Source: Mobula birostris (taxonomy: Eukaryota). Taken from it: a stretch of DNA of 64,000 nt. Below the pieces are notes generated by a model. The model made no database searches. It was not told where the DNA came from and saw nothing but the letters and a program-made list of their open reading frames with translations. This document shows positions 5,918 to 27,624 of the stretch, piece after piece. Numbering within the stretch: the stretch's first letter is position 1; the number at the start of each line of letters is the position of its first letter. Where the stretch lies: contig NC_092376.1 of NCBI RefSeq assembly GCF_030028105.1, positions 116,620,230-116,684,229 on the forward strand, written 5' to 3'. The position numbers were made by a program, and so were the translations under genes.

Positions 5918-6360
5918 ACTTTTGATCCTAAATTTGACTTCAAGAAAAGGTGAGGTTCTTTTGCCCGTTATTACCATTTGACTTGAGTTAATTCAGATAG
6001 TCCTTCTCTGATGCTTGGTTTATGGGTTTGGCTGGTGGTTTGATGTCTTTTTCTATAGAAGCTTGTTTGGCTCATAGCTCCGGGTTTGTGCTCCAAATGG
6101 TTTTCTTTTCTTTTTTTTTTAGTTATTCGGGGTTTTCTCTGTTTTAGTTAGTAAGGGTTCTTTTTTTTCTTTCTTTCCTTTTTTCGATATAAAAAAAGCT
6201 TTAATACTTTGTTTATTGATTATTATTGATATATTGTTCAGCCTGGTTGATAGTTTTAACTTTTACTTTACATATGGATATGTTATCTTGATTATTTTGA
6301 TGTATTTTTTTCTGTTGTTGATTTTCAATAATAATTAATAAAAAGATTTAAAAAGAAAAG
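5918..6360 (+). mobile_element. L1 3' UTR and A-rich tail
   Basis: T-rich UTR ending aataataattaataaaaaagatttaaaaagaaaag immediately after ORF2. Confidence 0.75.
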
Positions 6361-8460
6361 ACTTTTGAAAGATCATCGCTAATGCCTCTGCAATCTCCAC
6401 AGCTACTTCCTTCAGAACATGAGGGTGCATTCCATCTGGTCCGGGAGATTTATCTACCTTTAGACTATTCAGCTTCCTGAGTACTTTCTCTGTCATAATT
6501 GTGACTGCGCACACTTCTCTTCCCTCCACCCTTGAGTGTCCGGTATACTGCTGATGTCTTCCTCAGTGAAGACTGATGCAAAATACTCATTCAGTTCCTC
6601 CGCCATCTCCTTATCACCCATTACAATTTCTCCAGCATCATTTTCTATCGGTCCTATATCTACTCTCACCTGTCTTTTACTCTTTATATTCTTGAAAAAG
6701 CTTTTAGTATCCTCTTTGATATTATTTGCTAGCTTCCTTTCATAGTTAATCTTTTCCCTCTTAATAACCTTCTTAGTTTCCTTTTGTAAGGTTTTAAAAA
6801 CTTCCCAATCCTCTGTCTTCCCACTAATTTTTGCTTCCTTGTATGCCCTCTCCTTTGCTTTAACTTTGGCTTTGACTTCTCTTGTCAACCATGGTTGCAT
6901 CCTTTTTCCATTTGAAAATTTCTTCATTTTTGGAATATACCTGTCTTGCACATTCCTCATTTCTCGCATAAACTCCAGCCACTGCTGCTCTGCCGTCTTT
7001 CCCACCAGTGTCCCTTTCCAGTCAACTTTGGCCAGTTCCTCTCTCATGCCACTGTAATTTTCTTTACTCCACTGAAATACCGACACACCAGATTTCGGCT
7101 TCTCTTTTTCAAATTTCACAGTGAACTCAATCATGTTATGATCACTGTCTCCTAATGGTTCCTTCACCTCAATCTCTCTAATGACCTCCGGTTCATTACA
7201 CAATACCCAATCCAGTACAGCCGATCCCCTAGTGGGCTCAACAACAAGCTGTTCTAAAAAGCCATCTCGCAAACATTCTACAAATTCTCTCTCTTGAGAT
7301 CCAGTGCGGACCTGATTTTCCCAATCCACTCGCATGTTAAAATCCCCTGCAATTATCATAACACTACCCTTCTGACAAGCCTTTTCTATTTCCTGTTGTA
7401 ATTTGTAGTCCACATCCCTGCAGCTGTTTGGAGGCCTATAAATAACTGCCATCAGGATCCTTTTACCCCTGCGATTCCTTAGCTCAACCCATAAAGATTC
7501 TGCACCTTCCGATCCTATATCACCTCTTTCTAATGATTTAATATCATTTCTTACCAATAAAGCCACTCCTCCCCCTCTGCCTGCCTTCCTATCCTTCTGA
7601 TACACCGTGTATCCTTGGATGTTCAGCTCCCAGAGACATGCATCCTTTACCAACATCTCAGTGATGGCCACAACATCATACCTGCCAATCTGTAGCTGTA
7701 CGACAAGATCATCCACCTTATTCCTTATGCTGCGTGCATTTAAGTATAACACCTTAACACCAGTATTTGGTACTTTTCGCTTTGATTTCACTGCAACTTT
7801 ATTGCACTGCAACTCATCTCAGTGGCTACACATTTGCGCCATCACCTGCCTGTCTTTCCTGACATCTTTACTGCTCACTATCTTAGATTTATTTCTGTTT
7901 TTCCCTTCCTCCGCTCTGTCATTCCGGTTCCCATCCCCCTGCCAAATTAGCTTAAACCCTCCCTAACAGCTCTATTAAACTTTCCTGCCAGGATATTGGT
8001 CCCCTTCCGGTTCAGGTGTAATGTGTCATTTTTGAACAGGCCATACTTACCCCAGAAGAGATCCCAATTATCCAAGAATCTGAAGCCCTGCCCCCTGCAC
8101 CAGTCTCTCAGCCATGCATTCATCTACCTGATCCTACTATTCTTGCCCTCACTAGCACGTGGCACAGGTAGCAACACCGAGATTACTACCCTGGAGGTCT
8201 TGCTTCTCAGCTTCCTTCCTAACTCCCAGAGATCTCTCTTCAGGACCTCCTCCTTTGTCCTATCTATGTCACTGGTACCAACATGTACCAAGACAACAGG
8301 CTGCTCACCCTCCCCCTTCAGAATATTCTGGTTCCAATCCGAGACATCCCGTACCCTGGCACCTGGAAGGCAACACACCATGTGGGTATCTCTATCAGGC
8401 TCACAGAATCTCCTGTCCATTCCCCTGACTATGGAATCCCTTATGACTACCGCATTCCTC
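6360..8460 (-). mobile_element. CR1-clade LINE: ORF1 SGNH-esterase remnant, ORF2 endonuclease and start of RT, cut off at the L1 tail
   Basis: ORF 8124-8420 CCLPGARVRDV...VHVGT; ORF 6493-7812 LYLNARSIRNK, GDFN, SDH; ORF 6335-6529 KSPGPDG ending IFQKS at the L1 junction. Confidence 0.92.
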
Positions 8461-10600
8461 GTGCATGGATTTCCTTCAATGTCGTTTACTTCGCGGTTTT
8501 GGGGATAAAACAGTTCTTCAGATCACAGACATGACGCTACATCCACAGAAGTTCGTGCCTGAAATGTCCATCAGTAACACTATTGGGCAAGTGGGCAAGT
8601 GTCCGTCTGGCTGTTTGAACTGCTGGGTCTCCGGTCTGGTTGTGTCCTGTCACTTTGTGTCACGTTTCAATGTTTTGTGCGTGAAGGGAACGGAGGGTGA
8701 AGTAGAGAGTGAGCGAAAGATCAAGAGACCCAAAGAAGGTGATTCCACTATTTTTTGTTTTAAATCCAGCCTGGTCTGCACTGGCAGTCGAAATTTGGTC
8801 TGTCAACCCAGTTCAATACTGGAGTCATGGACATTTGTTGGTGAAGGGACTTTCAATCTCTGTCCAACTGTGAAGAGACTTAATGGTGGCACAAGAGTCT
8901 CTGAACTGCAAATTGTAGCCGCAGTTTTACTTTATTCAATCATGTTGTAATAAGCATGGACACGGGGAGTGATACTGGTGCTGTGGTCAGACCTGGTCCT
9001 AGGGATGCCTACATCAGATGTCTGGTGAACTTCCCAGGCAGCTCACAGGTAAAGGTGAGATGAAGATCAGACCCCAGTAATTGGGAGGTGACTGGCTGAT
9101 AGATGTGCAGAAGAAATATCAAGGAGGTGGGGAGGCAGTGGGAGATGTGGAAGTGATCGGAAGCATGGAGTGTGAGAAAGGATGAGCAGGGAAAATGAAC
9201 CATGATAATGGCCAGAAAGAGATGGACAGAAACAACAGAACAAGGCTGACTTGCCCTAGCCAAGGTATTCAGTTATTTTTCATGCAGAACAACTGTAATT
9301 AAATGTAATGCAGGGACTGATAATGATTTATATTGCATCATTAAAGCTAAAAAAAACTGACAGACAGATTTAAACATAACACCAAAGAATGGAAGTATTA
9401 GGATAATAATTTACAGAGGGATCAAAGTGATTTCAAGAAAAAGATGCCCACTGCCCCAGATCCAGGTTTTAGATATATATCCATTCTGTCTCAGATTACT
9501 GTGTCTCCAATTTATGAGAAGCAATGATGAGTGAGCAGTTTGCAGACAATGAGAGCAACTGTCTGAACACCTGGTGATGCAAAAGGCAGTTCAGATATAT
9601 TCTGACCAAATGGACCACCGATGTGTTCAAACAATGACTTTATCTTGAACTCTCCAAATATATTGAGCACTCACTACATTGAAGAGTGAGGGAGGGTCAT
9701 CTGTGACTCCAATCATTCATTGTTCTCTCTCTGTGGCAAGTATGTCTCTTCTTTGTTAAGAAACCGGAACTCTCCTCTACCTGCCCAGTGCAGTCTTGCC
9801 AAGACTCTGTACAACGACAGTATGACTCTGTGACTTCAATGTTCAAAGCTTCTAATTATAAATGGTAACTTATTATTTCCACCTGGAGAGTCTCTTGAAG
9901 AGATGTGAGTATCATCACACCTTGTTTCTAATGTTCAGCACCATCCAATCACTCAGAATTTAAGAAAAACTACTTTTACATGATTGGCACTAAATTGGAT
10001 GATCTCCCTTATGTCTTCATTGTTTTCCATCTGCCAATTTCTTGTCATCTCACTGAGTTTCTTCATAAAACATTTTGGACAAGTTTCCACAAGGTGATGA
10101 AATCAGGATTACTTCTATTTGTGTCACTGATTTGTTTACCTTCTTTGCTCATTCTGTGAACAGATGAAGTACCATTAATTTGGTCACATTAAGGTCTTTC
10201 AGTATTGCCATGACTTCGATTATTTTTCCTAACAAGAAATTAACTCAATTCCTAACCAAATGGTAATAGAGTTAATAAATCTGCAATAGTGATCTACATC
10301 TGATCATTACCACATCCCTGTCTGTGGAAGCAGTTTCCTCAATGGCTGCTCAGAGTGAAAGGCACTTTATTAAATGCAAGTTTTACTATCACTTTAACTG
10401 CAAACATTCCCAGCCTACTTTATGCAAATATCTTCACCAAATCTTAAAGTTCTAAACATAAATATTTCAATTAAAATCAATTTCAAGGCATACTTATTAA
10501 CTTTTATCACCAACAGTGCAGTCTATCCAAACAAAAAGACACTGATATCAGAGATTTAAATAAGAAACATCATTTCCATGGTGTGTAATAAAGCACTTAC

Positions 10601-10627
10601 TTATGGCTAACAGAACTGTGTGCTTGT
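10601..10627 (-). CDS. Candidate 27-nt micro-exon of TIM copy 1
   Basis: ttcttctgtacacAG acceptor, GTAAGT donor; phase-1 reading DKHTVLLAI; signals conserved in paralogs. Confidence 0.4.
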
Positions 10628-10879
10628 CTGTGTACAGAAGAAAGATTAAATTTATTTTCTTACATTTTTCAATGCTTGTAATGCAATTTTATTCACTTAC
10701 TTCAAGCTTATATAACTTGTAGAAAAGATTTGGGACAACAGGTGGATATTAAGTATTGAGACCATTGGAGGATCTTTAAAGTGCCACTGTTAGCTGTGAT
10801 TAGGACATTTTGTTTTGGGGTCAATTCTCTAATCTGCATTGGTTAACGGAGAAAACAGATGGAATAAGCTTGGGTTGTG

Positions 10880-11450
10880 AATCTGCAGGTGGATGGGCTT
10901 CATAGTCACAGGGTTGGACCCTCTTCTCTGCGTAACATATATCAAAGACTTAGCTCAAGGGCAACATTTCCAAGATTTAACACCATGAGATTTACAGAGA
11001 ATGTAAGGAGAAATCAGTGGAAAAGGGAGGTCTGGCTAAATAGATAAGGACATAATGAATGGGATATAATGTGGTGAAATGTGACATGATCCACTTCAGG
11101 AGGAATATTAGAAAAACAGATTTTTGTTATATGGTGAGTGATTGGATATCCAAAGGATCTGGGTGTCTGTGTTCATGGTCACTGAAGGCTAAGTAAGCCA
11201 ATAGGCAGATAAGCAAAAAACTTGTTTAGAAGAAATAAATATTCATACATTGATTCCAGGGAAACAGATGTTGAGCGCACAGCAGAGCTTAGAAGAATAG
11301 CAGGAGAGCTGATTGAAATGGATACAATTCTGAGAGGGCTACAAAAGGAAGGTGTAAGAAATGCTTTGCCTGTAGGGATCATCATCTCAAAATCTCAAAA
11401 TAAGGCATCATCATTCAGGATTGAGATGCAATGAAATATATGAGAGAAAA
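10880..11450 (+). mobile_element. Ancient decayed CR1 RT fragment shared by all duplicated blocks (continues ~13570-14000)
   Basis: ggaccctcttctc...atatatcaaagactt (GPLLF..YI.DL-like) and ggatctgggtgtc (DLGV-like) remnants; paralogs at ~22640 and ~62580. Confidence 0.6.
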
Positions 11451-11515
11451 AGTTATGTATTTTATATAAACAAGCTCCATGGGAGGGCAAGAAAATGTCA
11501 AAAGGAATATAATAT

Positions 11516-13566
11516 AATTGTAATAAAGGGAAATATGAGGCTACCAGGCAGGAACTTGGAAGCATAAATTGGTAACAGGTGTTCTCAGGGAAATGTACGA
11601 AAAAAATGTGGTAAATGTTCAGGGGATATTTTCATGGAATTCTGCATAGGTACATTCCAATGAGACAGGGAAAGGATGGTAGAGTACAGGAACCATGGTG
11701 TACAAAGGCTGTTGTAAATCTAGTCAAGAAGGGAAAGAAAAGCTTACGAAAGTTTCAAAATACTGGTAATGATAGAGTCCAGAAGATTATAAGGCTAGCA
11801 GGAAGGATAAGAAGTGAGAGAATAGGACCAATCAAGTGTGGCAGTGGAAAAGTGTGTATGGAACCAGAGGAGATAGCAGAGGTACTTACTAAATACTTTG
11901 CTTCAGTATTCACTATGGAAAAGGATCTTGGTGATTGTAGAGATGACTTAAAATGGACTGAAAAGCTTGAGCATGTAGATATTAAGGATGTGCTGGAGCT
12001 TTTGAAAAGCATCGAGTTGGATAATTCACCAGGACCAGATGAGATGTACGCCAGGCTACTGTGGGAGTCCAGGGAGGAGAGTGCTGAGCCTCTGGGGATG
12101 ATCTTTGCATCATCAATGGGGACGGGAGAGGTTCCAGAGGATTGGAGGGTTGCAAATGTTGTTCCTTTATTCAAGAAACAGAGTAGGGATAGCCCAGGAA
12201 ATTATAGACCAGTGGTTGATAAGTTGATGGAGAAGATCCTGAGAGGCAGGATTTATGAACATTTGGAGAGGCATAATATGATTAGGAATAGTCAGCATGG
12301 ATTTGTGAGAGGCAGGTCGTGCCTTACAAGCCCAACTGAATTTTTTGAGGATATGACTAAACACATTGATGATGGTAGAGCAGTAGATGTAGCGTATATG
12401 GATTTCAGCAAGGCATTTGATAAGGTACCCCATGCCAGGCTTATTGAGAAAGTAAGGAGGTATGATCCAAGGGGACATTGCTTTGTGGATCCGGAACTGG
12501 CTTTCCCACAGAAGGCAAAGAGTGGCTGTAGACGGGTGCTATTCTGCATGGAGGTCAGTGACCAGTGGTGTCCCTCAGGGGTCTGTTCTGGGACACCTAC
12601 TCTTTGTGATTTTTATAATGAACCGGATGAGGAAGCGGAGGGATGGGTTAGTAAATTTGCTGATGACACAAAGGTCAGGGTGTTGTAGATATTGTGGAGG
12701 GCTGCCAGAGTTTACAGTGGGACACTGATAGGAAGCAAAACTGGGCTGAGAAGTGTCAAATGGAGTTCAACCCAGATAAGTGAGAAGTGGTTCATTTTAG
12801 TTGGTCGAATATGATGGCAGATTGCAGTATTAATGGTAAGACTCTTGGCAGTGTGGAGGATCAGCGGGATCTTGGGTGCGAGTCCATAGGACACTCAAAT
12901 CTGCAGTGCAGATTGCCTCTGTGGTTAAGAAGGCATACGGTACATTGGCCTTCATCAATCGTGGAATTGAGTTTAGGAGCCGAGAGGTAATGTTGCAGCT
13001 ATATGGGACCCTGTTCAGACCCCACTTGGAGTACTGTGCTCAGTTCTGGTCGCTTCACTACAGGAAGGATGTGGAAAGCATAGAAAAGGTGCAGAGGAGA
13101 TTTATAAGGATGTTGTCTGGATTGGGGAGCATGCCTTATGAGAATAGATTGATGGAACTTGTCCTTTGCTTCTTGAAGCAAGGAAGGATGAGAGGTGACC
13201 TGATAGGCGTGTATAAGATGATGAGAGGCATTGATTGTGTGGATAGTCAGAGGCTTTCTCCCAGGGCTGAATTGGCTAGCATGAGAGGGCATAGTTTTGA
13301 GGTGCTTGGAAGTAGGTACAGAGGAGATGTCAGGGGTAAGTTTTTTATGTAGAGAGTGGTGAGTGCGTGGAATGTGCTGCCGGCGACAATGGTGGAGGCA
13401 GATCTGATAGGGTCTTTCAAGAGACCTGGATAGGTACATGGAATTTAGAAAAATAGAAGGCTATGGGTAACCCTAGGTAATATCTAAGGTAAGGACCTGT
13501 TCAGCACAGCTTTGTAGGCCGAAGGGTCTGTATTGTGCTGTAGGTTTTCTTACATTTCCATGTTCC
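11516..13566 (+). mobile_element. CR1-clade LINE (5'-truncated RT and 3' tail), unit-1-specific
   Basis: ORF 11615-12688 SPGPD, YMDFSKAFDKVPH, FADDTK; downstream RPHLEYC; empty site in unit 2 at ~23450. Confidence 0.92.
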
Positions 13567-14019
13567 TACAATGTGAAAAAATTTAAAGCTTATCCATTCT
13601 AGTGCAATTAATAGGAAAGTAACTAGTTATTAAATGGAGAGTGATTACGTAATGTTAAAGTTTATAGAGACCAAGGTCTGATGTAGGTGCAAATAGTCGA
13701 TTGCAATTTACAAGAGAATCTGAATACAGCAATGAGCAAGTCTTGCTGTACTTGTAAAATGACTTGGCAAAAGCACCCAAGAGTATATTGGACAGTTTTG
13801 ACCTCTTACCTAAGAAAGGATGTACTTGCTACAGGCAGAGTGCAATAATGATTCAGGATTGGTAGGTTTTCAAAATGAGAAGATATTGAGTAGACTGGGA
13901 TTTTACTTTCTTCAGCTTCAACAAAGAGAAAAAATCCTTCAAGAACCTGGCAGAAAAAAATGTAAGGAGGCTGTTTTCCCTGCCTGAGGAACCTAGAACT
14001 TGAGACAGGCCAGCAAAGC

Positions 14020-14160
14020 TTACATGAGAAATGAGAAAATCTGCTGATGCTGGAAATCGAAGGAGTGCACATAAAATGCTGGAGGTACTCCGCAGGCCAG
14101 GCAGCATCTATAGAAATCAGTACAGTTGATGGCTTGGGCCAATACCTTTCATCAGAACTG
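14020..14160 (-). mobile_element. Penelope pLTR fragment with decayed hammerhead (paralog ~23905-24055)
   Basis: aaaatgctggaggtactccgcaggccaggcagcatct; minus-strand CTGATGA core lacks GAAA. Confidence 0.7.
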
Positions 14161-14164
14161 TACA

Positions 14165-14755
14165 TGCCATAAGACTATAAGACATAGGAGCAGAATGAGG
14201 CCATTCAGCCCATTGAGTCTGCTTCACCATTCTATCATGGCTGATCCCAGATACTGCTCAACCCCATACACCTGCCTGCTCACCGTATCCTTTGGTGCCC
14301 TGATCAATCTGGAAACAATCAACTTCCACCTTAAATATACACACAGACATGGCCTCCACTGCAGTCTGTGGCAGAGTATTCCACAGATTTACTGCTCTCT
14401 GGCTAAAAAAATTCCTGCTTACCTCTGTTCTAAAGGGTCACTCCTCATTCATGAGGCTGTGCCCTACAGTTCTGGATACTCCCACCATAAGAAACATCGG
14501 CTCCACATCCACCTTACCTCATCCTTTCAACATTCTGTAGGTTTCAATTATATCTTCCCACATCTTTCTAAATTCCAGTGAGTACAGGCCCAAAGCTGCC
14601 AAATGCTCCTCACATGTCAACTCCTTGAATCCCGTAATCATCCCCATGAACCTCCTCTGGAATCTCTCCGATGACAACACATCCTTTCTGAGATAAGGGG
14701 CCCAAAACTGAGCCAATACTCTCAGTACAACCTGATTAGTATCTTGTAAAGCTCA
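14165..14755 (-). mobile_element. CR1 3' end shared by both units (paralog ~24060-24630)
   Basis: ORF 14519-14716 QFWAPYLRKDVLSSERFQRRF; tail ccataagactataagacatagg. Confidence 0.8.
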
Positions 14756-15189
14756 GCATAAGAAGATCTTTCTGTGGTCATGATCCTTTAGTCTGTAAAT
14801 GCACATTCTTCATATTTGTTCAAAACACAAATTGATAGATGTCTGGACATGGAGTCAAGGGATACAGGACAGTGGTGGAAAATAGCGCTGAGGTAGAAAC
14901 AAGATCAACCACATTCTGAATGAATGTTGGAACAGCCAGGAATGTCCAATGGACAACTGCTGCTTCTATTTGTTATGCTCCTATGACAGCAGCATTAACA
15001 CAGTTATTGACACCTGAAGCCCATTGTTCTGTGATGTATATCTGATGCAACACACAAAAGAATCTGACAATGCACTCTTAGTCCACATCACGTTGTACTG
15101 TCCTGCCGTTGTCATCCTGCACATTATCCATTCTATTGGATATACAACAGAGTGAATAATATCAGTATTCATTGTGGTATTTCTTATGT

Positions 15190-15495
15190 TCTCAGGGGCA
15201 GAAGAGGGCAGTTCAGCCCATCGAGATCATATCATCTGCCCCAGATTCCCATCGGATACATCCCTCATATCTCCCTAGAAACTTGGCTCCCGCCATTGTC
15301 CTGCCGTTAATTTACACTAGCGGCTGATTACGTTGACCGATTAATCTACCAACCTGTTCTTGCGATCTCAGAGCACCGGAGGAAGCAAGGAAGGACATAT
15401 GATTTCCGCACACTAAGCAGAGGAGCTCCCGATGGAACCAGAATCACAGGAGATCTGTGGAAAATGTACTAGCAGCTACACCACTATGCCGCCAT
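15190..15495 (-). mobile_element. tRNA-derived SINE in the intron after IgV, copy 1
   Basis: ggcggcatagtggtgtagc head; orthologous to copy 2 SINE, which keeps a B box. Confidence 0.55.
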
Positions 15496-15532
15496 TTCTG
15501 ACACAGAATCATGTAATAATTGAAATCCTTAC

Positions 15533-15813
15533 CGTCCAAAACCCAGAGATTCAAATTCGTTTTCAGATCATTAAACGGTCCCGGAATCTGCACACGGCAG
15601 CAATACCAGCCGCTATCTTCTCTCTGTAGATCATTTATAGTGAGCGACACATCTCCTGCCGCAATTCTACCACCAAATTTATATCTCTGGGATGTTACAG
15701 AAGTTACTCTGTCTCCATTTGTTCTAATCAACCCGTGGCCACAGGCGCTAAAAGGACACTGTCCCCAAACCCCAGCACATCTCACTTTTTACATATGTTC
15801 CGACAGAATAGCG
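15533..15813 (-). pseudogene. TIM IgV unit B (5'-truncated) of copy 1
   Basis: Starts at RYSV with no acceptor; +1 frameshift at WG; 3' part open: QCPFSACGHGLIRTNG...QREDSGWYCCRVQIPGPFNDLK...VLD with GTAAGG donor. Confidence 0.9.
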
Positions 15814-15870
15814 GCTACACCACTATGCCGCCATTTCTGACACAGAATCATGTAATATTGAGCTGCTTAC

Positions 15871-16218
15871 CATCCAAAACCCGGAGATTCAAATTCGTTT
15901 TCAGATTATTAAACGGTCCCGGAATCTCCACACGGCAGCAATACCAGCCGCTACCTTATCTCTCTAGATCATTTATAGTGAGCGACACATCTCCTGCCGC
16001 AATTCTACCACCAAGACTATATTTCTGGGATGTTACGGAAGTTACTCTGTCTCCACTTGTTCTGATCAGTTCATCTCCACAGTTCATAACATCACACTGT
16101 CCCCTACCCCAGCACATCGCACTTTTGACATATTTTCGGACAGAATAGCGGCACGGCAGTGTGATCGACTCTCCCGTGACTCCTCGCACGTTTGTCCCAG
16201 AGACGAAGGCGACTCGAC
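15871..16218 (-). pseudogene. TIM/HAVCR-family (HAVCR1/TIMD4-like) IgV exon A, copy 1, with premature stop
   Basis: tttcAG acceptor, GTAAG donor, 348 nt phase 1-1; ITLPCRYSV..MCWGRGQCDVMNC..GDVSLTINDLER*GSGWYCCRVEIPGPFNNLK; six-Cys TIM signature; TAA at 15956-15958. Confidence 0.92.
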
Positions 16219-16931
16219 CTGAAACAAACCAGGGAAAGAAAGTTACAGATGGCGCTGAATGAGATGATCAGACGGGTGAGCCCACAGTTTAGAAACCTGC
16301 CCGAGCAACGGCAATGTGATCCATTTTACCTGCCGGGCGGCATCTGAAGAATATTACGAAAATTCAAAGGGATGTGGATACTATTAGGTATTCCCGACAT
16401 TCTGAAACACCAATCCCTCAGCTGACCCGGAGTAGGATGTGGTGATCGACCAGCATTTCTGTAGTTTTGACAAAACCGATGGTCCTGCGGTATCATTTCA
16501 GAGAGCTGTTCTGTCACTAACACAGAAATAAGCAGGGAGGGACGAAGATCCGATTGTGATTTCGCGGATTGAAATCATTCTCCCCTCTTGCCATTTTGGA
16601 TCTGTGATTCATTTTCCCACTCACATACCCACTGTGCTCCCAAGCCTTCACCGCAATGATCGGGGATATTCCGAGCTTTGGTCTTGTTTCATGGTCCATT
16701 CAGATCAGCACTGATCAGTCCTGCAAGTTTACTCACCCCGTCAGTTCACCCCGCGCCCCCCCCCGGCCATTGATCAACAAAAACCGGCAGCGCCGGGCAT
16801 CACTCAGGGTCTCGGCTGTATCCCTCCCGGGTCCCTCACTCAAACACAGTCTCCGTCTCAACTACTGCGTCCAAGAAGTTAAAACAACAAGATTGAACAA
16901 AATAATTCAATTCCTGCTTTCAGAAACGTAC

Positions 16932-16983
16932 CGAACAGAAGTAACATTATTAACAAATGAGCCACAACGCCAGTAACAGCCAT
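16932..16983 (-). CDS. Signal-peptide exon 1 of TIM copy 1
   Basis: ATG at 16983, MAVTGVVAHLLIMLLLF+G, GTACGT donor, phase 1 joins the IgV exon in frame. Confidence 0.85.
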
Positions 16984-17184
16984 CGCTCCGGACACTGTGG
17001 CGGCCGCTCTCCGTGTCGCTGCAGCAGATGCTGCGGCTGCGAGTTAAACTGTTGCTTCCGGCTTATCGTGGACAAGTGTTCCTTCCACAGAAGCGGAGAA
17101 ATGAGGCAAATGTTACCAAACACTCGGCTCCTCCCCGGTGTTTCCATCAAAGTCTAAACGTGCACGGATTTCCTTCAATGTTGC

Positions 17185-17194
17185 TTTCAGTTCC
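17185..17194 (-). promoter_or_regulatory. Possible ETS-IRF composite element (GGAAnnGAAA) upstream of TIM copy 1
   Basis: GGAACTGAAA on minus strand ~200 nt upstream of ATG in a CpG-rich stretch; short motif, could be chance. Confidence 0.25.
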
Positions 17195-17534
17195 CGGTTT
17201 TGAGATAAATTAGTTCTTCCGATCACAGATGTGACGCGACATCGACAGAAATTCGTGTCTGAAATGTCCATCAGTAACACGAATGGGCAAATTGCCAAGT
17301 ATCCAACTGGCTGTTCGAACTGCTGGGTCGCTGGTCTGGTTGAGTCCTGTCATTTCGTGTCACGTTTCAATGCTTCGTACCTGAACGGAACGGAGGGTGA
17401 AGTAGAGAGTGAGTGAGAGATCAAGAGACCCAGATTCTGTTGAAACCATTTTCTGTTGAAACACAAGCCTGTTCTGCACTGGTAGTCTAAATTTGGTCTG
17501 TCAACCCAGTTCAAGACTGGAGTCAAGGTCATTT

Positions 17535-17797
17535 CATTCCACTGAGATGCAATACAGAGCGTCATAGGAAGTCATTCCTGCCTGTGGCCATCAAACTTTA
17601 CAACTCCTCCCTTGGAGGGTCAGACACCCTGAGCCAATAGGCTGGTCCTGGACTTATTTCCTGGCATAATTTACATATTACTATTTAATTATTTATGGTT
17701 TTATATTGCTATATTTATACTCTATTCTTGGTTGGGGCAACTGTAACAAAAATCAATTTCCCTCGGGATCAATGAAGTATGACTATGACTATGACTA
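17535..17797 (+). mobile_element. Short LINE 3' tail (Rex1/L2-like) with (gactat)n end, unit-2-specific
   Basis: Absent from paralogous site at ~8830; ends atgaagtatgactatgactatgactat. Confidence 0.6.
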
Positions 17798-18818
17798 TTT
17801 GTTGGTGAGGAGTGAAGGTACTTTCACTCTCTGTCCGACTGTGAAGAGGCTTAATGGTGACTCAAGAGTCTCTGAACTGCAAACTGCAAATTATTCAATC
17901 ATGCTGTAATAAGCACTGACACTGGGAGTGATACTGGTGCTGTGGTCAGACCTGGTACTAGGGATGACTACTTCAGATGTCTGGTGCACTTCCCAAGCAG
18001 CTCATAGGTAAAGCTGAGATGAAGATCAGACCCCAGTAATTGGGAGGGACTGATATGAAGAAGAAATATCAAGGAGTTGGGGAGGCAGTGGGAGATGAGG
18101 AAGTGATCGGAAGCAAGGAGTGTGAGAAAGGGTAGGCAGGGAAAATGAACCATGATAATGGCCAGAAAGAGATGAACAGAAACAACAGAACGAGACTGAT
18201 TTGCCCTTTCCAGGCTATTCAGTTATTTTTCATGCAGAACAACTGTAATTAAATGTAATGTAGGGACTGATAATTATTTATATTCAATCATTAAAGGTAA
18301 AAAAAAATCTGGCAGAAAGAATTGAACATAACACTAAAGGATGGAGGTATTGGGATGATGATTTACAGAAGGGTCAAAGTGATACCAAGAAAAAGAAGCT
18401 CAATGCCCCAGATCCAGGCTGCAGATATATATTCATTCTGTCTCAGATTACTGTGCCTCCAATTTATGAGAAACAATGATAAGTGAGCAATTTCCAGATG
18501 AGAGTAAATGTCTGAACACTGGGTGATGCAAAGGGCTGTTCAGATATATTCTGACCAAATGGACCACCAATGTGTTCAAACAATGACTTTATCTTGAACT
18601 CTCCAAATATATTGAGCATTCACTACATTGAAGGCTGGGGGAAGAGTGACGTGAATAGCTGTCTGTGACTCCAGTTATTAATTGTTCTCTCTTTTTGGCA
18701 GGTATGTCCTTTCATTGTTAAGAAACCAGAACTCTCCACTACCTGCCCAGTGCAGTCTTGCCAAGACTCTGTACAACTACAGTATGACTCTGTGACTCCT
18801 ATGTTTAAAGCTTCTAAT

Positions 18819-19365
18819 GTTTAAAACTCTGGTTAGGCCACACTTGGAGTACTGTGTCCAGTTCTGGTCACCTCACTGTAGGAAGGATGTGGAAGCATTG
18901 GAAAGGGTACAGAGGAGATTTACCAGGAATGCTGCCTGGTTTAGAAAGTATGCATTATGATCAGAGATTAAGAGAGCTAGGGCTTTACTCTTTGGAGAGA
19001 AGGAGGATGAGAGGAGACATGATAGACGTGTACAAGATAATAAGAGGAATAGATAGAGTGGATAGCCAGCACCCCTTCCCCAGGGCACCACTGCTCAATA
19101 CAAGAGGACATGGCTTTAAGGTAAGGGGTGGGAAGTTCAAGGGGGATATTAGAGGAAGGTTTTTTACTCAGAGAGTGGTTGGTGCATGGAATGCACTGCC
19201 TGAGTCAGTGGTGGAGGCAGATACACTAGTGAAGTTTAAGAGACTACTGGACAGGTATATGGAGGAATTTAAGGTGGGTGCTTATATGGGAGGCAGGGTT
19301 TGAGGGTCGGCACAACATTGTGGGCCAAAAGGCCTGTACTGTGCTGTATTATTCTATGTTCTATA
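18819..19365 (+). mobile_element. CR1 3' end, unit-2-specific
   Basis: ORF 18854-19303 LYSLERRRMRGD...FTQRVVGAWNALP; tail ctgtattattctatgttcta; empty site at ~9855. Confidence 0.9.
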
Positions 19366-19548
19366 ATAATAAATGGTAACTTATTATTTGCACCTGGAGA
19401 GTCTCTTGAAGAGATGTGAGTATCATCACACCTTGTTTCTAATGTTCAGCACCATCCAATCACTTAGCATTTAAGTAAAATTACTTTTACATTATCAGCA
19501 CTAAAATGATGATCTCCCATATGTCTTCATTGGGTTCCATCTGCCAAG

Positions 19549-21748
19549 TGTCGTAGACTAGTCTGTGAAGTCTGCATTCCGGTTCACGGCCCGGTCCATC
19601 GATCCTTGTTCTGGGTTTTCCTGTTTTCTCTCTTGTTCTGTTGGGTGCTTTAATTGAGGCATCTGATTCTCATTTCGGTCTGACACATAAATACCTCTGC
19701 AAACCAGGGATTGTTTGCTGGACTGTTCCCTTCCCTTCCCCTTCCTTCTGAAGCCTTTGCCTACAACCTTCACCTGATGCCTCACCTGCAACCTCGCCTG
19801 CATCCTTGCCTGTTATGCTGTCAGGTTCAACCGCCAGAGCAAGACCAGGGCCTTGCTGTGTCAAAATAAGGAACAGTCTGTCATTGTTTGGAATTGTCTC
19901 TTTGGGTCCTCGCCTTCGCTAGGTAGGTCCGGCCGTTTGCCACTACCTTGTGTTGGGAATTGTCTCTTTGTGTCCTGACCTCCGCTGGGTAGGCCCGGCC
20001 ACTTGCTGCTACCCTGAGTGAAGAACTGTCTCTTTGTGTTCAGTGTTTTGTGCATAGAAAGCGCCCCGGCCCTTGGTCCTATTCCCAAGGAGGGGGCCCT
20101 GGCTCTGTGTACTGTGTACGAGTCCCGGCCCTACATCCTGCTCCCAAGGAGGGGTCTTGGCTCTGTGCTCCATGATCCAAGTCCAAGGCTCCGAGGTTCC
20201 TGAGTTCCAAGCCCAAAGCTCCTGGGTTCCTGAGTTTCAAGCCCAAGGCTCCGAGGTTCCTGAGTTCCACGCCCAAGGCTCTGAGGTTCCTGAGTTCCAA
20301 GCCCAAGGCTCTTAGGTTCCTGAGTTTCAAGCCCAAGGCTCCGAGGTTCCTGAGTTTTAAGCCCAAGGCTCCGAGGTTCCTGAGTTCCAACTCCAAGATC
20401 CAGGGTTCCTAGTCCCAACCAAGGCCCAGGTTCTGGGTCCTTGTCCAGGCTCTAGTTCCGGAGTCCTGGGTTCCTAGTCCAGGTTCATTTTTCCTAATTC
20501 CTTGTCCGGGTTCCATGTTTCTTGTCCACGTCCTAGCCCAGGCCCTGCATCCTAGTCTCATCCAGGGCCTGCGTCAATGTCCAGTGTCCTTTCTTCCCCA
20601 CTTCCCTTGTTTTCTTGACACACCAAGTCCTGCTCCTAGTACTTCAGTGTCTGTGTCTTGCATTTGGGTCCGCCACCAACGCCCCCTGGATGACAGAACA
20701 GTCCTGTCAAGCATGGACCAAGTGACACGGACACTGTTGTTTTACTCTCGCCATTCTGGCTTCCCTCCTGTTGTCCGCCCTCCCCCAACCACCCGTGTAG
20801 TCCATCGTCTGGTGAAGCCTTTTGGGTCACCAGGAGGCTCCCATGGAGGGGTGGATACTGTCATGGTCCGGTCCATGAAGTTTACATTCCAGTTCGCGGC
20901 CCGGTCCATAGATCCTTTTCCAGGTTTTCCTGTTTTCTCCCTTGTTCTGTTGGGTGCTTTAATTCAGGCATCTGATTTTCATTTCAGTCTGGCACATAAA
21001 TCCCTCCGCAAATCAGAGACTGTTTGCTGGATTGTTCCCTTCCCTTCCCCTTTCACCTGAACCCTCGCCTGTAATGCCGTCAGGTTCAACCGCCAGAGCA
21101 AGACCGGGGCCTTGCTGTGTCAAGATAAGGAACAGTCTGTCATTGTTTGGAATAGCCTCTTTGTGTCCTCGCCTTCGCTAGGTAGGTCCGTCCATTTGCC
21201 GCTTCCTTAAGGTGAGAACTGTCTCTGTTTCCGCGCCTTCGCTACGTAGGTCCGGCCATTTGCCACTACCCTGAGTGGAGAACTGTCTCTGTGCTCAGTG
21301 TATTGTGTACAGAAAGAGCCCTGACCCTTGCTCCTTTTCCCAAGGAGGGGATCCTGGCTCTGTGTGTTGTGTACGAGCCCCGGCCCTTGGTCCTTTTCCC
21401 AAGGAGGGATCCCGGTTCTGTGTTCCATATTCCTGAGTTCCAAGCCCAAGGCTCTGAGGTTCCTAGTCCCAACCAAGACCCAGGTTCTGAGTCCTTGTCC
21501 AGGCTCTAGTTCTGGAGTCCCGTGTCCCCAGTCCAGGATTCTAGATCCTAGTTCCTTGTCCGGGTTCCGTGTTTCTTGTCCATGTCCTAGCCCAGGCCCT
21601 GCATCCTAGTCTCATCCAGGGCCTGTGTCAATGTCCAGCGCCCTTTCTTCCCACTTCCCTTGCTTTCTTGACACACCGAGTCCTGTTCCTAGTACTTCAG
21701 TATCTGTGTCTTGCATTTGGGTCCACCACCAATGCCCCCCAGATGACA
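19549..21748 (+). mobile_element. TRIM-like internally deleted Gypsy-type LTR element
   Basis: LTR1 19549-20695 and LTR2 20859-21748, both TGTC...GACA; 163-bp internal part; PPT-like ggaggggtggatac; 5-bp TSD CCAAG (19544-19548, 21749-21753). Confidence 0.88.
20183..20392. repeat. 30-bp minisatellite (7 copies) inside LTR1
   Basis: Unit ccaaggctccgaggttcctgagttccaagc; gives the 10-aa periodic ORFs in the track. Confidence 0.9.
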
Positions 21749-22347
21749 CCAAGTTCTTGAAGTATCACTGAGCTTCTTCATTAAACATTGTGGACATGTT
21801 TCCACAAGGTAATGAAATCAGGATTACTTCTATCTATGTCACTGATTTGTTTACCTTGTTGCAAATTCTATGAACAGACACAATATCATTATTATTGTCA
21901 TATTATGTCTTTCTGTATTTTCTTGACTTTGATTATCTTTAAGAACAAGAAATTAACTCAATTCCTAAACAACTGGTAATCAACTGAATAAATCTACAAT
22001 CAGGATCTACATCTGATCATCACCACGTCACTGTCTGTGACAGGTACCCCAATGGCTGCTCAGTGCTAAAAGCACTCTATTAAATGCAAGTCTTATTTTC
22101 ACTTTAACGGCAAACATTCCCAGCCTGCCTTATGCAAATATCTTCACCAAATCTTAAGGCTCTAAACATAAACATTTCAATTAAAATCAATTTCAAGGCA
22201 TACCTGTTAACTTTTATAATCAGCAGTGCAGTTTATCCAAACAAAACACATTGATATCAGAGATCTGAGTATCAGAGTATCTAAGTATCAACACATTGAT
22301 ATCAGAGTAAGCAACATCATTTCCATTGTGTGTAATGAAACACTTAC

Positions 22348-22374
22348 TTGTGCTTAACAGAGCTGTGTGCTTGT
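22348..22374 (-). CDS. Candidate 27-nt micro-exon of TIM copy 2
   Basis: acacAG ... GTAAGT; phase-1 reading DKHTALLST. Confidence 0.4.
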
Positions 22375-23303
22375 CTGTGTCGCAGAATAAACATTAAATT
22401 TATTTTTATGTTTTTCAATGCTTGTCATGCAATTTCATTCACTTCAAGCTTATACAACTTGTAGAAAAGATTAGGGAGAACTGGTGGATAGTAAGCATTT
22501 AGACCATTGGAAGATCTTTAAACTGCCACAGTTAGACTTGATTAGAACACATTGGATTGGGGTTAATTCAGATATTTGCATTGTTTAACAGAGTAAACAG
22601 AGACGGAATAAGCTTGGGTTGTGAAACTGCAAGTGGTAGAATTCCATAGTCATAGGGTTGGACCCTCTTCTCTTCATAACATATATCAAAGACTTAGCTC
22701 AAGGGTAACATTTCCAAGATTTAATAATAGCTAATTAACTGTGTGAGATTTACAGAGAATGCAAGGAGAAATCAGCGGAAAAGAGAAGACTGGCTAAATA
22801 GACAAGGAGATGACAAATAGAATATCATGTGGAGAAATGTGACATGATCCACTTCAGTAGGAACATCAGAAAAACAGATTTTTGTTATATGTTGAGTGCT
22901 TGGATATTCAAGGAATCTGGGTGTCTGTGTACATGTCACTGAAAGCTTAGTAAGCCAATAGGCAGATAAAAAAGACTTGATCAGAAGAAATAAATGTTCA
23001 TTCATTGATTCCAGGTAAACAGATATTGGTCTTTACACAGATGTTCAGCACACAACATAGCTTAGATGAATAGGGGGAGAGCTGATTGAAATGTATAAAA
23101 TTCTGAGAGGGCTTCAAAGGGCAGGTGTAAGAGATACTTTGCCTGTAGGAATCATCATCTCAAAGTAAGGCATCATCATTCAGGACTGAGATGCAATGAA
23201 ATATATGAGGGAACAAGTTATATATTTTGAATTTTCCAATACTGTAAGAACAAGAGGGATTGGGTGCACAAAGCAGGATGTGAAGAGGTTGCAAGGTTAT
23301 ATA

Positions 23304-23401
23304 AGCAACACACACAAAAAATGCTGCCTGGCCTGCTGCGTTCACCAACATCTTTTGTGTGTGTTGCTTGAATTTCCAGCATCTGCAGATTTCCTCATGT
23401 T
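23304..23401. mobile_element. Fold-back Penelope pLTR mini-insertion, unit-2-specific
   Basis: 17-bp inverted repeat 23303-23319 / 23353-23369; direct repeat aaggttatataa at 23293-23304 and 23402-23413. Confidence 0.75.
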
Positions 23402-25089: not shown

Positions 25090-25372
25090 AAGAGGGCCGT
25101 TCAGCCCATCGAGACCATATCAACTGCCCAAGATTCCCATCGGATACATCCCCCATATCTCCCCAGAAACTTGGCTCCCGCCATTGTCCTGCCGTTAATT
25201 TACACTAGCGACAGTTTATGCTGACCTATTAATCTACTAACCTGTTCTTGCGATCTCAGAGCACCCGGAGGAAGCAAGGAAGGACATATGGTTTCCGCAC
25301 AGGAGCGCGGGATCGAACCTGCATCTCAGGAGATGTGGGGCAATTACCTAGCCGCTACACCGCTGAGCCGCC
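25090..25372 (-). mobile_element. tRNA-derived SINE in the intron after IgV, copy 2
   Basis: Head ggcggctcagcggtgtagcgg; B box GGTTCGATCCC at 25309-25319. Confidence 0.7.
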
Positions 25373-25410
25373 ATTTCTGACACAGAATCATGTAATATTG
25401 AGCTGCTTAT

Positions 25411-25691
25411 CGTCCAAAACCAGGAGATTCAAATTAGTTTTCAAATCATTATGTCGTCCCGGAATCCGCACACGGCAGCAATACCAGCCGCTATCTTCTC
25501 TCTGTAGATCATTTATAGTGAGCGACACATCTCCTGCCGCAATTCTACCACCAAGTTTATATCTCTGGGATGTTACAGAAGTTACTCTGTCTCCATTTGT
25601 TCTAATCAACCCGTGGCCACAGGCGCTAAAAGGACACTGTCCCCAAACCCCAGCACATCTCACTTTTTACATATGTTCCGACAGAATAGCG
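25411..25691 (-). pseudogene. TIM IgV unit B' (5'-truncated, donor GT>AT) of copy 2
   Basis: Same frameshift as unit B; 3' part QREDSGWYCCRVRIPGRHNDLK; ends GAC G|ATAAG. Confidence 0.9.
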
Positions 25692-25748
25692 GCTACACCA
25701 CTATGCCGCCATTTCTGACACAGAATCATGTAATATTGAGCTGCTTAC

Positions 25749-26029
25749 CGTCCAAAACCCGGAGATTCAAATTCGTTTTCAGATTATTAAACGGTCCCGG
25801 AATCTCCACACGGCAGCAATACCAGCCGCTACCTTATCTCTGTAGATCATTTATAGTGAGCGACACATCTCCTGCCGCAATTCTACCACCAAGTTTATAT
25901 CTCTGGGATGTTACAGAAGTTACTCTGTCTCCATTTGTTCTAATCAACCCGTGGCCACAGGCGCTAAAAGGACACTGTCCCCAAACCCCAGCACATCTCA
26001 CTTTTTACATATGTTCCGACAGAATAGCG
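25749..26029 (-). pseudogene. Chimeric TIM IgV unit (B 5' half plus A 3' half) of copy 2
   Basis: CPFSAC-type 5' half with frameshift joined to TAA (25834-25836) and EIPGPFNNLK 3' half. Confidence 0.88.
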
Positions 26030-26086
26030 GCTACACCACTATGCCGCCATTTCTGACACAGAATCATGTAATATTGAGCTGCTTAC

Positions 26087-26434
26087 CGTCCAAAACCCGG
26101 AGATTCAAATTCGTTTTCAGATTATTAAACGGTCCCGGAATCTCCACACGGCAGCAATACCAGCCGCTACCTTATCTCTGTAGATCATTTATAGTGAGCG
26201 ACACATCTCCTGCCGCAATTCTACCACCAAGTTTATATCTCTGGGATGTTACAGAAGTTACTCTGTCTCCATTTGTTCTAATCAGTTCATCTCCACAGTT
26301 CATAACACCACACTGTCCCCGGCCCCAGCACATCTCACTTTTTACATATTTTCGGACAGAATAGCGGCACGGCAGTGTGATCGACTGTCCCGTGACTCCT
26401 CGCACGTTTGTCCCAGAGACGAAGGCGACTCGAC
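26087..26434 (-). pseudogene. TIM/HAVCR-family IgV exon A', copy 2, with premature stop
   Basis: 348 nt, AG/GT intact, MCWGRGQCGVMNC...DLQR*GSGWYCCRVEIPGPFNNLK; TAA at 26172-26174. Confidence 0.92.
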
Positions 26435-27126
26435 CTGAAACAATCCAGGAAAGAAAGTTACAGATGGCGCTGAATGAGATGATCAGACGGGTGTGTCCAC
26501 AGTTTAGAAACTTGCCCGAGCAACGGGAATGTGATCCATTTTACCTGCCGGGCGGCATCTGAGGAATATTACGGAAAATTTCTATGTATTCAAGGGGATG
26601 TGGATATTATTAGGTATTCCTGACATCCTGAAACACCCACCCCTCAGCTGACCCGGAATACGATGTGGTGATCGCATTGCATTTCTGTAGTTTTGACACA
26701 ACTGATAGTCATGCGGTAACATTTCAGAGAGCTGTTCAGTCACTGACACAGAAACATGCAGGAAAGGTACGAAGATCCGATTGTGATCTCGAGTATTGAA
26801 ATCATTGTCCTCTCTTGCCATTTTGGATCTGGGATTCATTTTCCCACTCACATACCTACTGTGCTCCCAAACCTTCACCGCAATGATCAGGGGATATTCC
26901 GAGCTTTGGTCTTGTTTCATGGTCCATTCAGATCAGCAATGATCAGTCCTCCAAGTTCACTCACCCCGTCAGTTCACCTCCACCACCACCTCCGCCCCAT
27001 TAATATCTCGGCTGTACCCTCCTGGGTCCCTCACTCACACACAGACTCCATCTCAATTATTGCATCCAGGAGGTTAAAGCAACAAGACTGAACAAGCTAA
27101 TTCGATTCCTGCTTTCAGAAACGTAC

Positions 27127-27178
27127 CTAACAGAAGTAACATCATTAACAAATGAGCCACAACGTCAGTAACAGCCAT
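27127..27178 (-). CDS. Signal-peptide exon 1 of TIM copy 2
   Basis: MAVTDVVAHLLMMLLLL+G, GTACGT donor, phase 1. Confidence 0.85.
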
Positions 27179-27624
27179 CGCGCCGGACACTATTGATGGG
27201 CCTGGTCTAGGTGGGCTGGGTCAGCGTCAATGTCTCACTGAACTGAATGATGGCATGATCTTCCAGATGCTCATCTGCAATCTGTACACGATCACAACTT
27301 TAAGCATTCAAAGATCGCAACTGTGTGCAACAGCAAAAAAAAACACAAATAAATCAACTTTTCTGAAGTAATCCTACAAGAGCTTTACGAAAGCACTTCC
27401 ATATAGCTGACAATTTCAGTGACATTTCTCCCCATATTAACCACATGTTCAGCACTTCAGTCATGGGCATGCAAAACCTCTGTAGAAAGTGCAAATCGTT
27501 ATTTTGTGAGTCACACAAGGAAGGACAGTGATGCATAATTTACTCATATCAGATCAACACAATAAAGGTTGTGGACAAAATTCATGCTGCTTTCACACCA
27601 ACCAGCCCTGATCACAAAGTTCAT

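What the first reader, a model, noticed from the sequence alone, without database searches (positions are those of the whole stretch)
15533..16218. 338-bp IgV cassette with complementary lesions: a recombination-reversible pseudogene
Unit A has the acceptor and an intact 5' half but TAA at 15956. Unit B, 338 bp downstream, lacks the acceptor and is frameshifted at WG but has an intact 3' half (EDSGWYCC..PGPFND) and a GT donor. One unequal crossover between the frameshift and the stop deletes 338 bp and gives a complete open 348-nt exon. The reciprocal product (A, B/A, B) is exactly what copy 2 contains, so such exchange evidently happens. The locus could segregate on/off alleles or generate IgV variants by recombination. 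The A-B junction uses gc(c/g)gcta microhomology between the intronic SINE head and the RYS codons.
Basis: partly seen in the sequence, partly recalled or inferred. Interest (0 to 1): 0.75.

Follow-up and report, generated by a model that had tools for sequence, protein, structure and literature searches.

The report
Broken, duplicated TIM receptor exon in manta
In the manta ray, a spare copy of the first part of a TIM immune-receptor gene carries an internal 338-base repeat with a stop and a frameshift; the repeat has clearly been shuffled by recombination, but everything points to an ordinary decaying gene copy, not a genetic on/off switch.

Summary
On the minus strand there is a TIM-family (HAVCR1/TIMD4-like) IgV exon. 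Unit A (16218-15871, 348 nt) has an acceptor, its own donor and a TAA at 15958-15956. Unit B (15808-15533) has no acceptor and a +1 T frameshift, but keeps its donor. An A5'/B3' product would be 348 nt and open. The middle unit of copy 2 is a perfect B5'/A3' chimera.

The switch reading is not supported.
- The 338-nt block carrying both lesions differs at 2/338 sites between the two paralogous cassettes. The outer halves differ at 30/338, like the flanking introns (132/1620). So the block is a recent transfer, and the rest drifts at the intron rate.
- No mucin, transmembrane or tail exon lies downstream of either cassette in the window.
- Copy 2's last unit has lost its donor.
- In copy 1 the productive crossover interval has only a 50-nt perfect tract.
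- The stop-free RNA contigs carry an AAA codon and a leader variant. These match an intact paralogue (Mobula birostris XP protein P0155), not a recombinant.
- One low-depth RNA-like contig keeps the TAA.

Verdict: pseudogenised leader+IgV cassettes in a ray TIM cluster, reshaped by unequal crossover and gene conversion. The scan had also noted copy 2 separately (s1-146168).

The parts
16932..16983 (-). Leader (signal peptide) exon of cassette copy 1. It reads MAVTGVVAHLLIMLLLFG and ends in phase 1 with a GT donor.
   Evidence: tblastn with ray TIM leaders. The homologous exon-exon joint was seen in RNA contig X15 record 14, which skips 16219-16931 with GT..AG on the minus strand.
16219..16931 (-). 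Intron 1 of cassette copy 1.
   Evidence: Joint. It is 8.6% diverged from the copy 2 intron.
15871..16218 (-). Unit A: a complete 348-nt TIM-type IgV exon (phase 1-1) with acceptor and own donor. It is disabled by TAA at 15958-15956. It also has Asp to Gly in the DxGxYxC motif and FND to FNN.
   Evidence: Pfam V-set 3.4e-09. PDB TIM-4/TIM-1 at 1e-18.
15809..15870 (-). 62-nt intron stub after unit A's donor (GT 15870-15869). It ends in the GCCGCTA microhomology (15815-15809) at the A-B junction.
   Evidence: The same 49 nt recur after unit B (family D3).
15533..15808 (-). Unit B: a 5'-truncated IgV exon copy starting at the RYS codons, with no acceptor. It has a +1 T frameshift in the run 15773-15763 and a CC'-loop patch of the other ray TIM type. 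The 3' half is open (EDSGWYCC, PGPFND). GT donor at 15532-15531.
   Evidence: Pfam V-set 2e-10. PDB TIM-1/TIM-4 at 4e-22.
15620..15958 (-). Central 338-nt block (A 3' half + intron stub + B 5' half). It carries both lesions and is nearly identical between copy 1 and copy 2 (2/338 differences).
   Evidence: P = 1.6e-10 against the flank rate.
15300..15518 (-). Only its first ~50 nt are repeated after unit A.
   Evidence: The SINE identity is not verified.
25349..26434 (-). Paralogous cassette copy 2 with three units. c2A is the exon 26434-26087 and carries the TAA. c2M (25687-26024) is a perfect B5'/A3' chimera with both lesions. c2B (25349-25686) has the frameshift and a donor changed from GT to AT.
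27125..27178 (-). Leader exon of cassette copy 2 (MAVTDVVAHLLMMLLLLG).
8460..16996 (-). Segmental copy 1 (leader + IgV + about 7 kb downstream). It is the tandem paralogue of 17159-27191 at 84-94% identity.

Best explanation
These are two non-functional leader+IgV cassettes of the manta ray TIM (HAVCR/TIMD4-like) gene cluster. They are partial tandem duplicates, about 8.5-10 kb each, of the 5' end of a TIM gene.

Inside the IgV exon, a microhomology-mediated join (GCCGCTA) placed a 5'-truncated second IgV copy 62 nt after the donor of the first. The resulting 338-nt block consists of the A 3' half with its TAA, the intron stub, and the B 5' half with its frameshift. This block was recently copied between and within the two cassettes by gene conversion or unequal crossover. 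It now occurs once in copy 1 and twice in copy 2.

Shown:
- the structure and the lesions;
- the perfect chimera;
- the young shared block set against old outer halves diverged at the intron rate;
- an intact, expressed paralogue.

Inferred:
- that the cassettes make no protein, and at most give a low-level stop-containing transcript;
- that the recombination is ordinary repeat instability in a multigene immune family, not a regulatory device.
For: Family assignment:
- Pfam V-set.
- The best solved relatives are the TIM-4, TIM-1 and TIM-3 IgV domains, E 1e-18 to 4e-22.
- The closest proteins are Mobula, Hypanus and Hemitrygon HAVCR1/2/TIMD4-like models.

Lesions.

Segmental duplication: 8460-16996 against 17159-27191.

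Divergence between the two cassettes:
- central block 2/338;
- outer halves 30/338;
- introns 132/1620;
- binomial P 1.6e-10.
Nei-Gojobori counts for exon A are 6 synonymous and 8 non-synonymous changes, too few to show constraint.

Further decay: c2B has lost its donor, and unit A has FNN and Gly in place of conserved Asp residues.

Missing exons: no mucin, TM or tail exon lies downstream of either cassette in the window. Such exons are readily found at 53.3, 48.1, 45.0 and 41.9 kb, where they belong to another gene.

RNA:
- The spliced leader-IgV contig and the B3'-like contig of X15 carry Ala8Val and an AAA Lys codon.
- They also read RVE and RYSLGG, as in domain 2 of P0155.
- The X10 contig keeps the TAA at depth 4.

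DNA depth: the junction contig sits at about three times single-copy depth, matching the three junctions in the assembly.
Against: - Exon A as a whole is less diverged between the copies (14/348) than the introns. This is fully explained by the converted 3' half, but some past constraint cannot be excluded.
- In copy 1 the leader exon, both splice sites of intron 1, the acceptor and both donors are intact. A5'+B3' has no stop.
- Annotated TIM models in this cluster span 27, 48 and 92 kb. Partner exons beyond the window start therefore cannot be excluded.
- A related species (run X4) has an A3'-like contig with GAA GAT instead of TAA GGT. The stop may therefore be young.
- Only contigs, not reads, were available, so 1-unit alleles could have been missed.
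Confidence: 0.75

Rival explanations
1. The locus is a recombination-reversible gene: unequal crossover between units A and B regenerates an open 348-nt IgV exon. In that case 1-, 2- and 3-unit alleles segregate as on/off states, or the units serve to generate IgV variants.
For: - The arithmetic works: 348 nt, 0 stops.
- c2M is the reciprocal-type product of exactly such an exchange.
- Leader, acceptor and donor are intact in copy 1.
- Both lesions lie in one young 338-nt block, so removing it leaves old but unbroken halves.
- The contigs for A5' and B3' in run X1 have about twice the depth of the flanking introns (unexplained).
Against: - The outer halves diverge at the intron rate.
- No downstream exons were found in the window.
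- The productive interval in copy 1 has a longest perfect tract of 50 nt and 8 mismatches in 110 nt.
- The corresponding copy 2 product would lack a donor.
- The stop-free RNA is accounted for by P0155.
- No 338-nt-skipping joint was seen in four runs, and junction depth fits three copies.
Confidence: 0.07
2. Recent knock-out by conversion. One cassette (copy 1) had an intact single-unit exon until recently. It was then disabled when gene conversion from the other cassette inserted the 338-nt lesion-bearing block. On this view the repeat marks a fresh gene death, and intact alleles may still exist.
For: - The pattern is exactly old / young / old along the array.
- A5'+B3' of copy 1 is open.
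- Organism B shows an A3'-like sequence without the stop.
Against: - The same pattern arises if both cassettes already had two units and only the centre was homogenised.
- Intron-rate divergence of the outer halves argues that the cassette was already unconstrained.
- c1B3' has Arg to Trp in the otherwise conserved NLNLRV strand.
Confidence: 0.13
3. Assembly artefact. The tandem units result from mis-assembly of paralogous IgV exons.
For: The cluster is repetitive, and many near-identical IgV exons exist.
Against: - An independent contig spans the A-B junction with 0 mismatches at three times single-copy depth.
- The TAA-bearing contig sits at 2.6 times single-copy depth.
- A third TAA-bearing variant occurs in another sample.
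Confidence: 0.02

Closest known systems
TIM family IgV domains (HAVCR1/TIM-1, TIMD4/TIM-4, HAVCR2/TIM-3) and the annotated ray homologues (Mobula birostris XP_072120702.1 = P0016; the M. birostris 'HAVCR2 homolog' P0155; Hypanus sabinus XP_059846116.1 = P0002)
   Same: - V-set fold.
- Six-cysteine pattern (LPC, MCW, GxC, xC, YCC).
- RY..GD.SLTI and DSG.YCC motifs.
- FG-loop F-N-D.
- 1e-18 to 4e-22 to solved TIM IgV structures.
- 94% identity of c2A to domain 2 of P0155.
   Different: - A stop codon, a frameshift and a truncated second unit.
- FNN and Gly at conserved Asp positions in unit A.
- No mucin, TM or tail exons nearby.
Mouse pink-eyed unstable (p^un): an intragenic tandem duplication that reverts by deletion of one repeat (PMC8345144)
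   Same: A direct tandem duplication inside a gene destroys the product, and loss of exactly one unit would restore an open frame.
   Different: - p^un repeats are about 70 kb, and reversion restores a complete working gene and is observed as pigmented spots.
- Here the units are 338 nt and about 88% alike, with a 50-nt perfect tract in the useful interval.
- The rest of the gene is not evident, and no revertant was seen.
Human haptoglobin HP2/HP1: a 1.7-kb two-exon intragenic duplication with recurrent deletion back to the one-unit form (PMC7210291, which cites Boettger et al. 2016, Nat Genet 48:359)
   Same: A copy-number polymorphism of an intragenic tandem unit, produced and removed by non-allelic exchange.
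   Different: - Both HP forms encode working proteins.
- Here all the observed forms are broken.
Pseudogene members of tandem immune-receptor and V-gene arrays shaped by unequal crossover and gene conversion (general knowledge, not tested here)
   Same: - Paralogous cassettes.
- Patchy identity.
- Chimeric units.
- Lesions spread by conversion.
   Different: No evidence here that the pseudo-units donate sequence to a functional gene, as chicken pseudo-V segments do.

Membership tests
TIM-family IgV domain | Immunoglobulin V-set fold | tested here: met
   Pfam PF07686: 3.4e-09 for the A 5' piece and 2e-10 for the B 3' piece.
TIM-family IgV domain | Closest solved relatives are TIM-1, TIM-4 and TIM-3 IgV domains | tested here: met
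   5dzn, 2or8, 5f7f, 3bi9 and others at 1e-18 to 4e-22. pIgR and other V domains score far weaker.
TIM-family IgV domain | Six cysteines (the canonical pair plus four that pin the CC' loop) | tested here: met
   Unit A translation has C in LPC, MCW, GQC, NC and YCC. In unit B the series is interrupted by the frameshift.
TIM-family IgV domain | FG-loop Asn-Asp of the metal-dependent ligand site (WFND in mammals; the residues' role is recalled from the TIM-4 literature) | tested here: inconclusive
   Unit B has PFND, as the intact Mobula paralogues do. Unit A and c2M have PFNN.
Complete TIM receptor gene | Mucin stalk, transmembrane and cytoplasmic exons downstream of the IgV exon | tested here: not met
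   tblastn with five ray TIM C-terminal parts finds such exons only at 53.3, 48.1, 45.0 and 41.9 kb. It finds none in 1-15500 or 17159-25300. Exons beyond the window start cannot be excluded, because models in this cluster span 27-92 kb.
Revertible intragenic tandem-duplication allele (p^un / HP2 type) | Direct tandem duplication inside the coding exon that breaks the frame | tested here: met
Revertible intragenic tandem-duplication allele (p^un / HP2 type) | The one-unit form is an intact, functional gene | tested here: inconclusive
   The exon would be open. However, the outer halves evolve at the intron rate and no partner exons were found.
Revertible intragenic tandem-duplication allele (p^un / HP2 type) | One-unit (revertant) alleles or transcripts are observed | tested here: not met
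   No 338-nt-skipping joint in X1, X4, X10 or X15. The stop-free RNA contigs carry paralogue-specific letters. Power is low, since only contigs were available and a 50-nt shared tract lies between the two lesions.
tRNA-derived SINE (for the intron stub) | Dispersed copies and tRNA-like head | tested here: not met
   No copies in the window outside the paralogous positions. ARAGORN and Rfam find nothing, even at E <= 1. One 64-kb window is a small sample.

The most novel reading that the evidence does not exclude
The 338-nt block is a young, spreading 'disabling insert'. If so, intact one-unit alleles of this cassette would still segregate in manta populations (or recur by unequal exchange) and would splice to distant TIM constant exons. 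The species would then have a presence/absence polymorphism of one IgV specificity, driven by repeat gain and loss.
Probability: 0.08. Interest if true: 0.6.

Novelty: new member of a known kind. Interest (0 to 1): 0.27.

Why it matters
As it stands, this is a tidy worked example of how exon-sized repeats and gene conversion move lesions around in a tandem immune-receptor cluster of a cartilaginous fish. It is useful for annotation: these cassettes should be flagged as pseudogenes, and stop-free RNA that maps here belongs to a paralogue. It would matter more only if a one-unit open allele were found segregating and spliced to constant exons.

The wider context may deserve its own study. This context consists of arrays of leader+IgV cassettes, two-IgV TIM genes, and two old CC'-loop types shared by mantas and stingrays. 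I found no paper on elasmobranch TIM clusters in the library.

Tried and rejected
- Attributing the exon-only 'A5' plus B3'' RNA coverage in X15 to a recombinant allele. Rejected: the contigs carry AAA (Lys) at the stop/Glu codon, GAG (Glu) in RVE, the SL codons and a leader Ala8Val. These match P0155/P0158-type paralogues.\n- Arguing that the lesions predate the segmental duplication because both copies share them. Withdrawn: the lesion-bearing block is 99.4% identical between the copies while the flanks are about 92%.

Full report
**What is there**

The window is vertebrate DNA (GC 42%, CpG observed/expected 0.33). It comes from the manta ray Mobula birostris, assembly GCA_030028105.1. This follows from a 109-residue exon of the annotated protein XP_072120702.1 (P0016), which is encoded at 20408-20082 with 100% identity.

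The finding lies on the minus strand. A leader exon at 16983-16932 reads MAVTGVVAHLLIMLLLFG. It is followed by a 713-nt intron and then by an IgV exon that starts at a good acceptor at 16218.

Unit A runs 16218-15871. It is 348 nt in phase 1-1 and has its own GT donor at 15870-15869. Its single stop, TAA, lies at 15958-15956. Sixty-two nucleotides after that donor, the sequence re-enters an IgV exon at the RYS codons (15808), inside the heptamer GCCGCTA. This heptamer is shared by the Cys-Arg-Tyr codons and the intron stub.

Unit B runs 15808-15533 and has no acceptor. It has one extra T after the CWG codons, an open 3' half and a GT donor at 15532-15531. TRF and the repeat finder report the 338-nt period at 2.0 copies here and 3.0 copies at 25349-26368.

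**Family**

Both open pieces hit Pfam V-set. Their best solved relatives are the IgV domains of TIM-4, TIM-1, TIM-2 and TIM-3, at 1e-18 to 4e-22. The closest proteins in the large libraries are HAVCR1, HAVCR2 and TIMD4-like models of Mobula, Hypanus, Hemitrygon, Pristis and sharks.

The six-cysteine TIM pattern is present. The FG loop reads PFND in unit B, as in the intact paralogues. In unit A it reads PFNN, and unit A has also replaced the Asp of the DxGxYxC motif by Gly.

**Context**

The unit sits in a tandem segmental duplication: 8460-16996 against 17159-27191, at 84-94% identity. Each segment carries a leader exon, the IgV array and about 7 kb of downstream sequence.

tblastn with the C-terminal parts of five ray TIM proteins finds mucin exons at 53299-53219 and 48166-48107. 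It also finds a transmembrane exon at 45067-44972 and a tail exon at 41891-41823. It finds nothing of the kind downstream of either cassette. The two mucin exons are identical to P0016. The P0016 gene model spans 47.6 kb, starts beyond the window end and ends in a tandem-repeat exon at 20.4 kb.

Other annotated TIM models on this chromosome span 27 and 92 kb. An earlier first-reader note (s1-145536) describes an array of leader+IgV cassettes just beyond the window end. The absence of partner exons inside the window is therefore suggestive, not conclusive.

**Recombination is real**

In an alignment of the five units, the middle unit of copy 2 has 0 differences from c2B over columns 1-189 and 0 differences from c2A over columns 80-338. 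It is thus a perfect B5'/A3' chimera whose crossover lies in a 110-nt tract where c2A and c2B are identical.

A further pattern emerged. The contiguous 338-nt block made of the A 3' half, the intron stub and the B 5' half carries both the stop and the frameshift. It differs between copy 1 and copy 2 at only 2 of 338 sites. The outer halves (A5', B3') differ at 30 of 338 sites, which is indistinguishable from the flanking introns at 132 of 1620. The binomial P for the block is 1.6e-10.

So the lesion-bearing block is young. It has been moved between and within the cassettes by conversion or unequal exchange, and it now occurs once in copy 1 and twice in copy 2. Everything around it has diverged at the same rate as the flanking introns since the segments duplicated.

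I cannot say whether a cassette was single-unit before it received the block. Homogenisation of the centre of an already two-unit array gives the same picture.

**B is not simply a decayed A**

The CC'-loop patch of A (QC-G/D-VMNCGDELIRT) and that of B (QCPFSACGHGLIRT) correspond to two types. Both occur in intact proteins of Mobula and of the stingray Hypanus, for instance as domains 2 and 1 of the two-IgV protein P0155.

Divergence between A and B is 24% in columns 1-79 and about 8% elsewhere. Either the join brought together exons of two lineages, or the patch was converted later.

**Test of the switch idea**

The arithmetic is right: A5' joined to B3' within the shared tract gives 348 nt with no stop. 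Against the idea stand five points.

1. The halves that would form the open exon show no excess conservation over the introns.
2. No partner exons were found in the window.
3. In copy 2 the last unit has lost its donor (GT to AT) and carries a cluster of further changes.
4. In copy 1 the interval between the frameshift and the stop offers only a 50-nt perfect tract, with 8 mismatches in 110 nt. By general knowledge of homologous recombination, this is a poor substrate.
5. Unit A is a complete exon with its own donor, so unit B is most simply intronic debris.

**Reads**

Only Logan contigs were available. I laid two DNA runs and two RNA-like runs on 15200-17100.

X15 behaves as RNA. It covers only exonic parts, and one contig joins the leader to the IgV exon across 16219-16931, with GT..AG on the minus strand.

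The letters say otherwise. The B3'-like contig has AAA (Lys) where A has TAA and B has GAA. It also has GAG for RVE and the Ser-Leu codons. The leader part has 6 of 82 mismatches, including Ala8Val. These are the features of P0155 ('hepatitis A virus cellular receptor 2 homolog', M. birostris). P0155 is an intact two-IgV TIM whose second domain is 94% identical to c2A and reads ...RYSLGG...LQRKDSGWYCCRVEIPGPFND.

X10 comes from the same study as X15 and is probably RNA too. It holds a 281-nt contig at depth 4 that keeps the TAA. That contig is a mosaic of c1A-like and c2A-like letters, so a stop-containing A unit is probably transcribed at a low level.

In DNA run X1, the contig across the A-B junction matches perfectly and has about three times the depth of unique flanks. 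This is as expected for the three junctions in the assembly. No 338-nt-skipping joint was reported in any run.

Run X4, from a related species, has an A3'-like contig reading GAA GAT and FND, and no TAA contig. This fits a young stop, but it could equally be a paralogue.

Contigs built from 31-mers cannot phase across the 50-nt tract shared by all units. The absence of a one-unit form is therefore weak evidence.

**Comparison with known systems**

Mechanistically the idea resembles the mouse pink-eyed unstable allele, a roughly 70-kb intragenic duplication that reverts by loss of one repeat (PMC8345144). It also resembles the human haptoglobin HP2/HP1 exon duplication with recurrent deletion (PMC7210291, citing Boettger et al. 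2016). In both of those, the one-unit form is a demonstrably working gene and revertants are observed. Here neither condition is met.

The better filing is a pseudogenised partial duplicate in a tandem immune-receptor family, reshaped by unequal crossover and gene conversion. I found no paper on elasmobranch TIM clusters in the library.

**Verdict**

This is a new member of a known kind, of modest interest. I give the residual novel reading, a still-segregating one-unit open allele, about 8%.

No step had to be referred. The ERV-like stretch at 32-40 kb was not touched.

Noticed in passing
window 20082-20408 (minus strand), within the 30-bp tandem repeat 20176-20433: The last coding exon of the annotated M. 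birostris protein XP_072120702.1 (P0016) is 100% identical here and is a translated 30-bp tandem repeat (LRNLGALGL...). The model joins a leader+IgV beyond the window end and the mucin exons at 53.3 and 48.1 kb to this exon over about 28 kb, skipping the TM exon (45.0 kb) and the tail exon (41.9 kb). It looks like an aberrant or alternative 3' end.
   Followed up: partly
window 41823-53299 (minus strand): Constant-type TIM exons: mucin 53299-53219 and 48166-48107, TM 45067-44972, tail 41891-41823. Between the two mucin exons, at about 50546-50328, lies the remnant of an IgV exon. It has only a recognisable 3' half and its donor is lost. This agrees with note s1-145883.
   Followed up: partly
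window 60100-64000 compared with 9400-12255 and 21749-23228: A third copy of the cassette's downstream segment runs off the window end. Its leader+IgV exons (probably those of P0016) should lie 3-4 kb beyond the window. Together with note s1-145536, this suggests arrays of leader+IgV cassettes upstream of shared constant exons, a layout like variable first exons. Not tested.
   Followed up: no
proteins P0155 (M. birostris) and P0002 (Hypanus sabinus): Rays have intact TIM receptors with two tandem IgV domains. The two CC'-loop types (GVMNC type and P-x-x-G-C-G-H type) are shared between manta and stingray, so they are old lineages. The P0155 gene model spans 92 kb.
   Followed up: partly
window 15993-16227 and 15539-15650, run X1: Contigs for the c1A 5' half and the c1B 3' half have about twice the depth (28.6 and 34) of the perfectly matching intron-1 contigs (about 14). 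There is also an unplaced joint from 15861 to 15366 with 23 extra letters. Possible further copies or heterozygosity; unexplained.
   Followed up: no
window 19547-21749: A 2.2-kb repeat-rich insertion in copy 2 relative to copy 1. It holds satellites of 24, 30, 59, 64 and 66 bp and an internal duplication (19794-20216 against 21053-21472).
   Followed up: no
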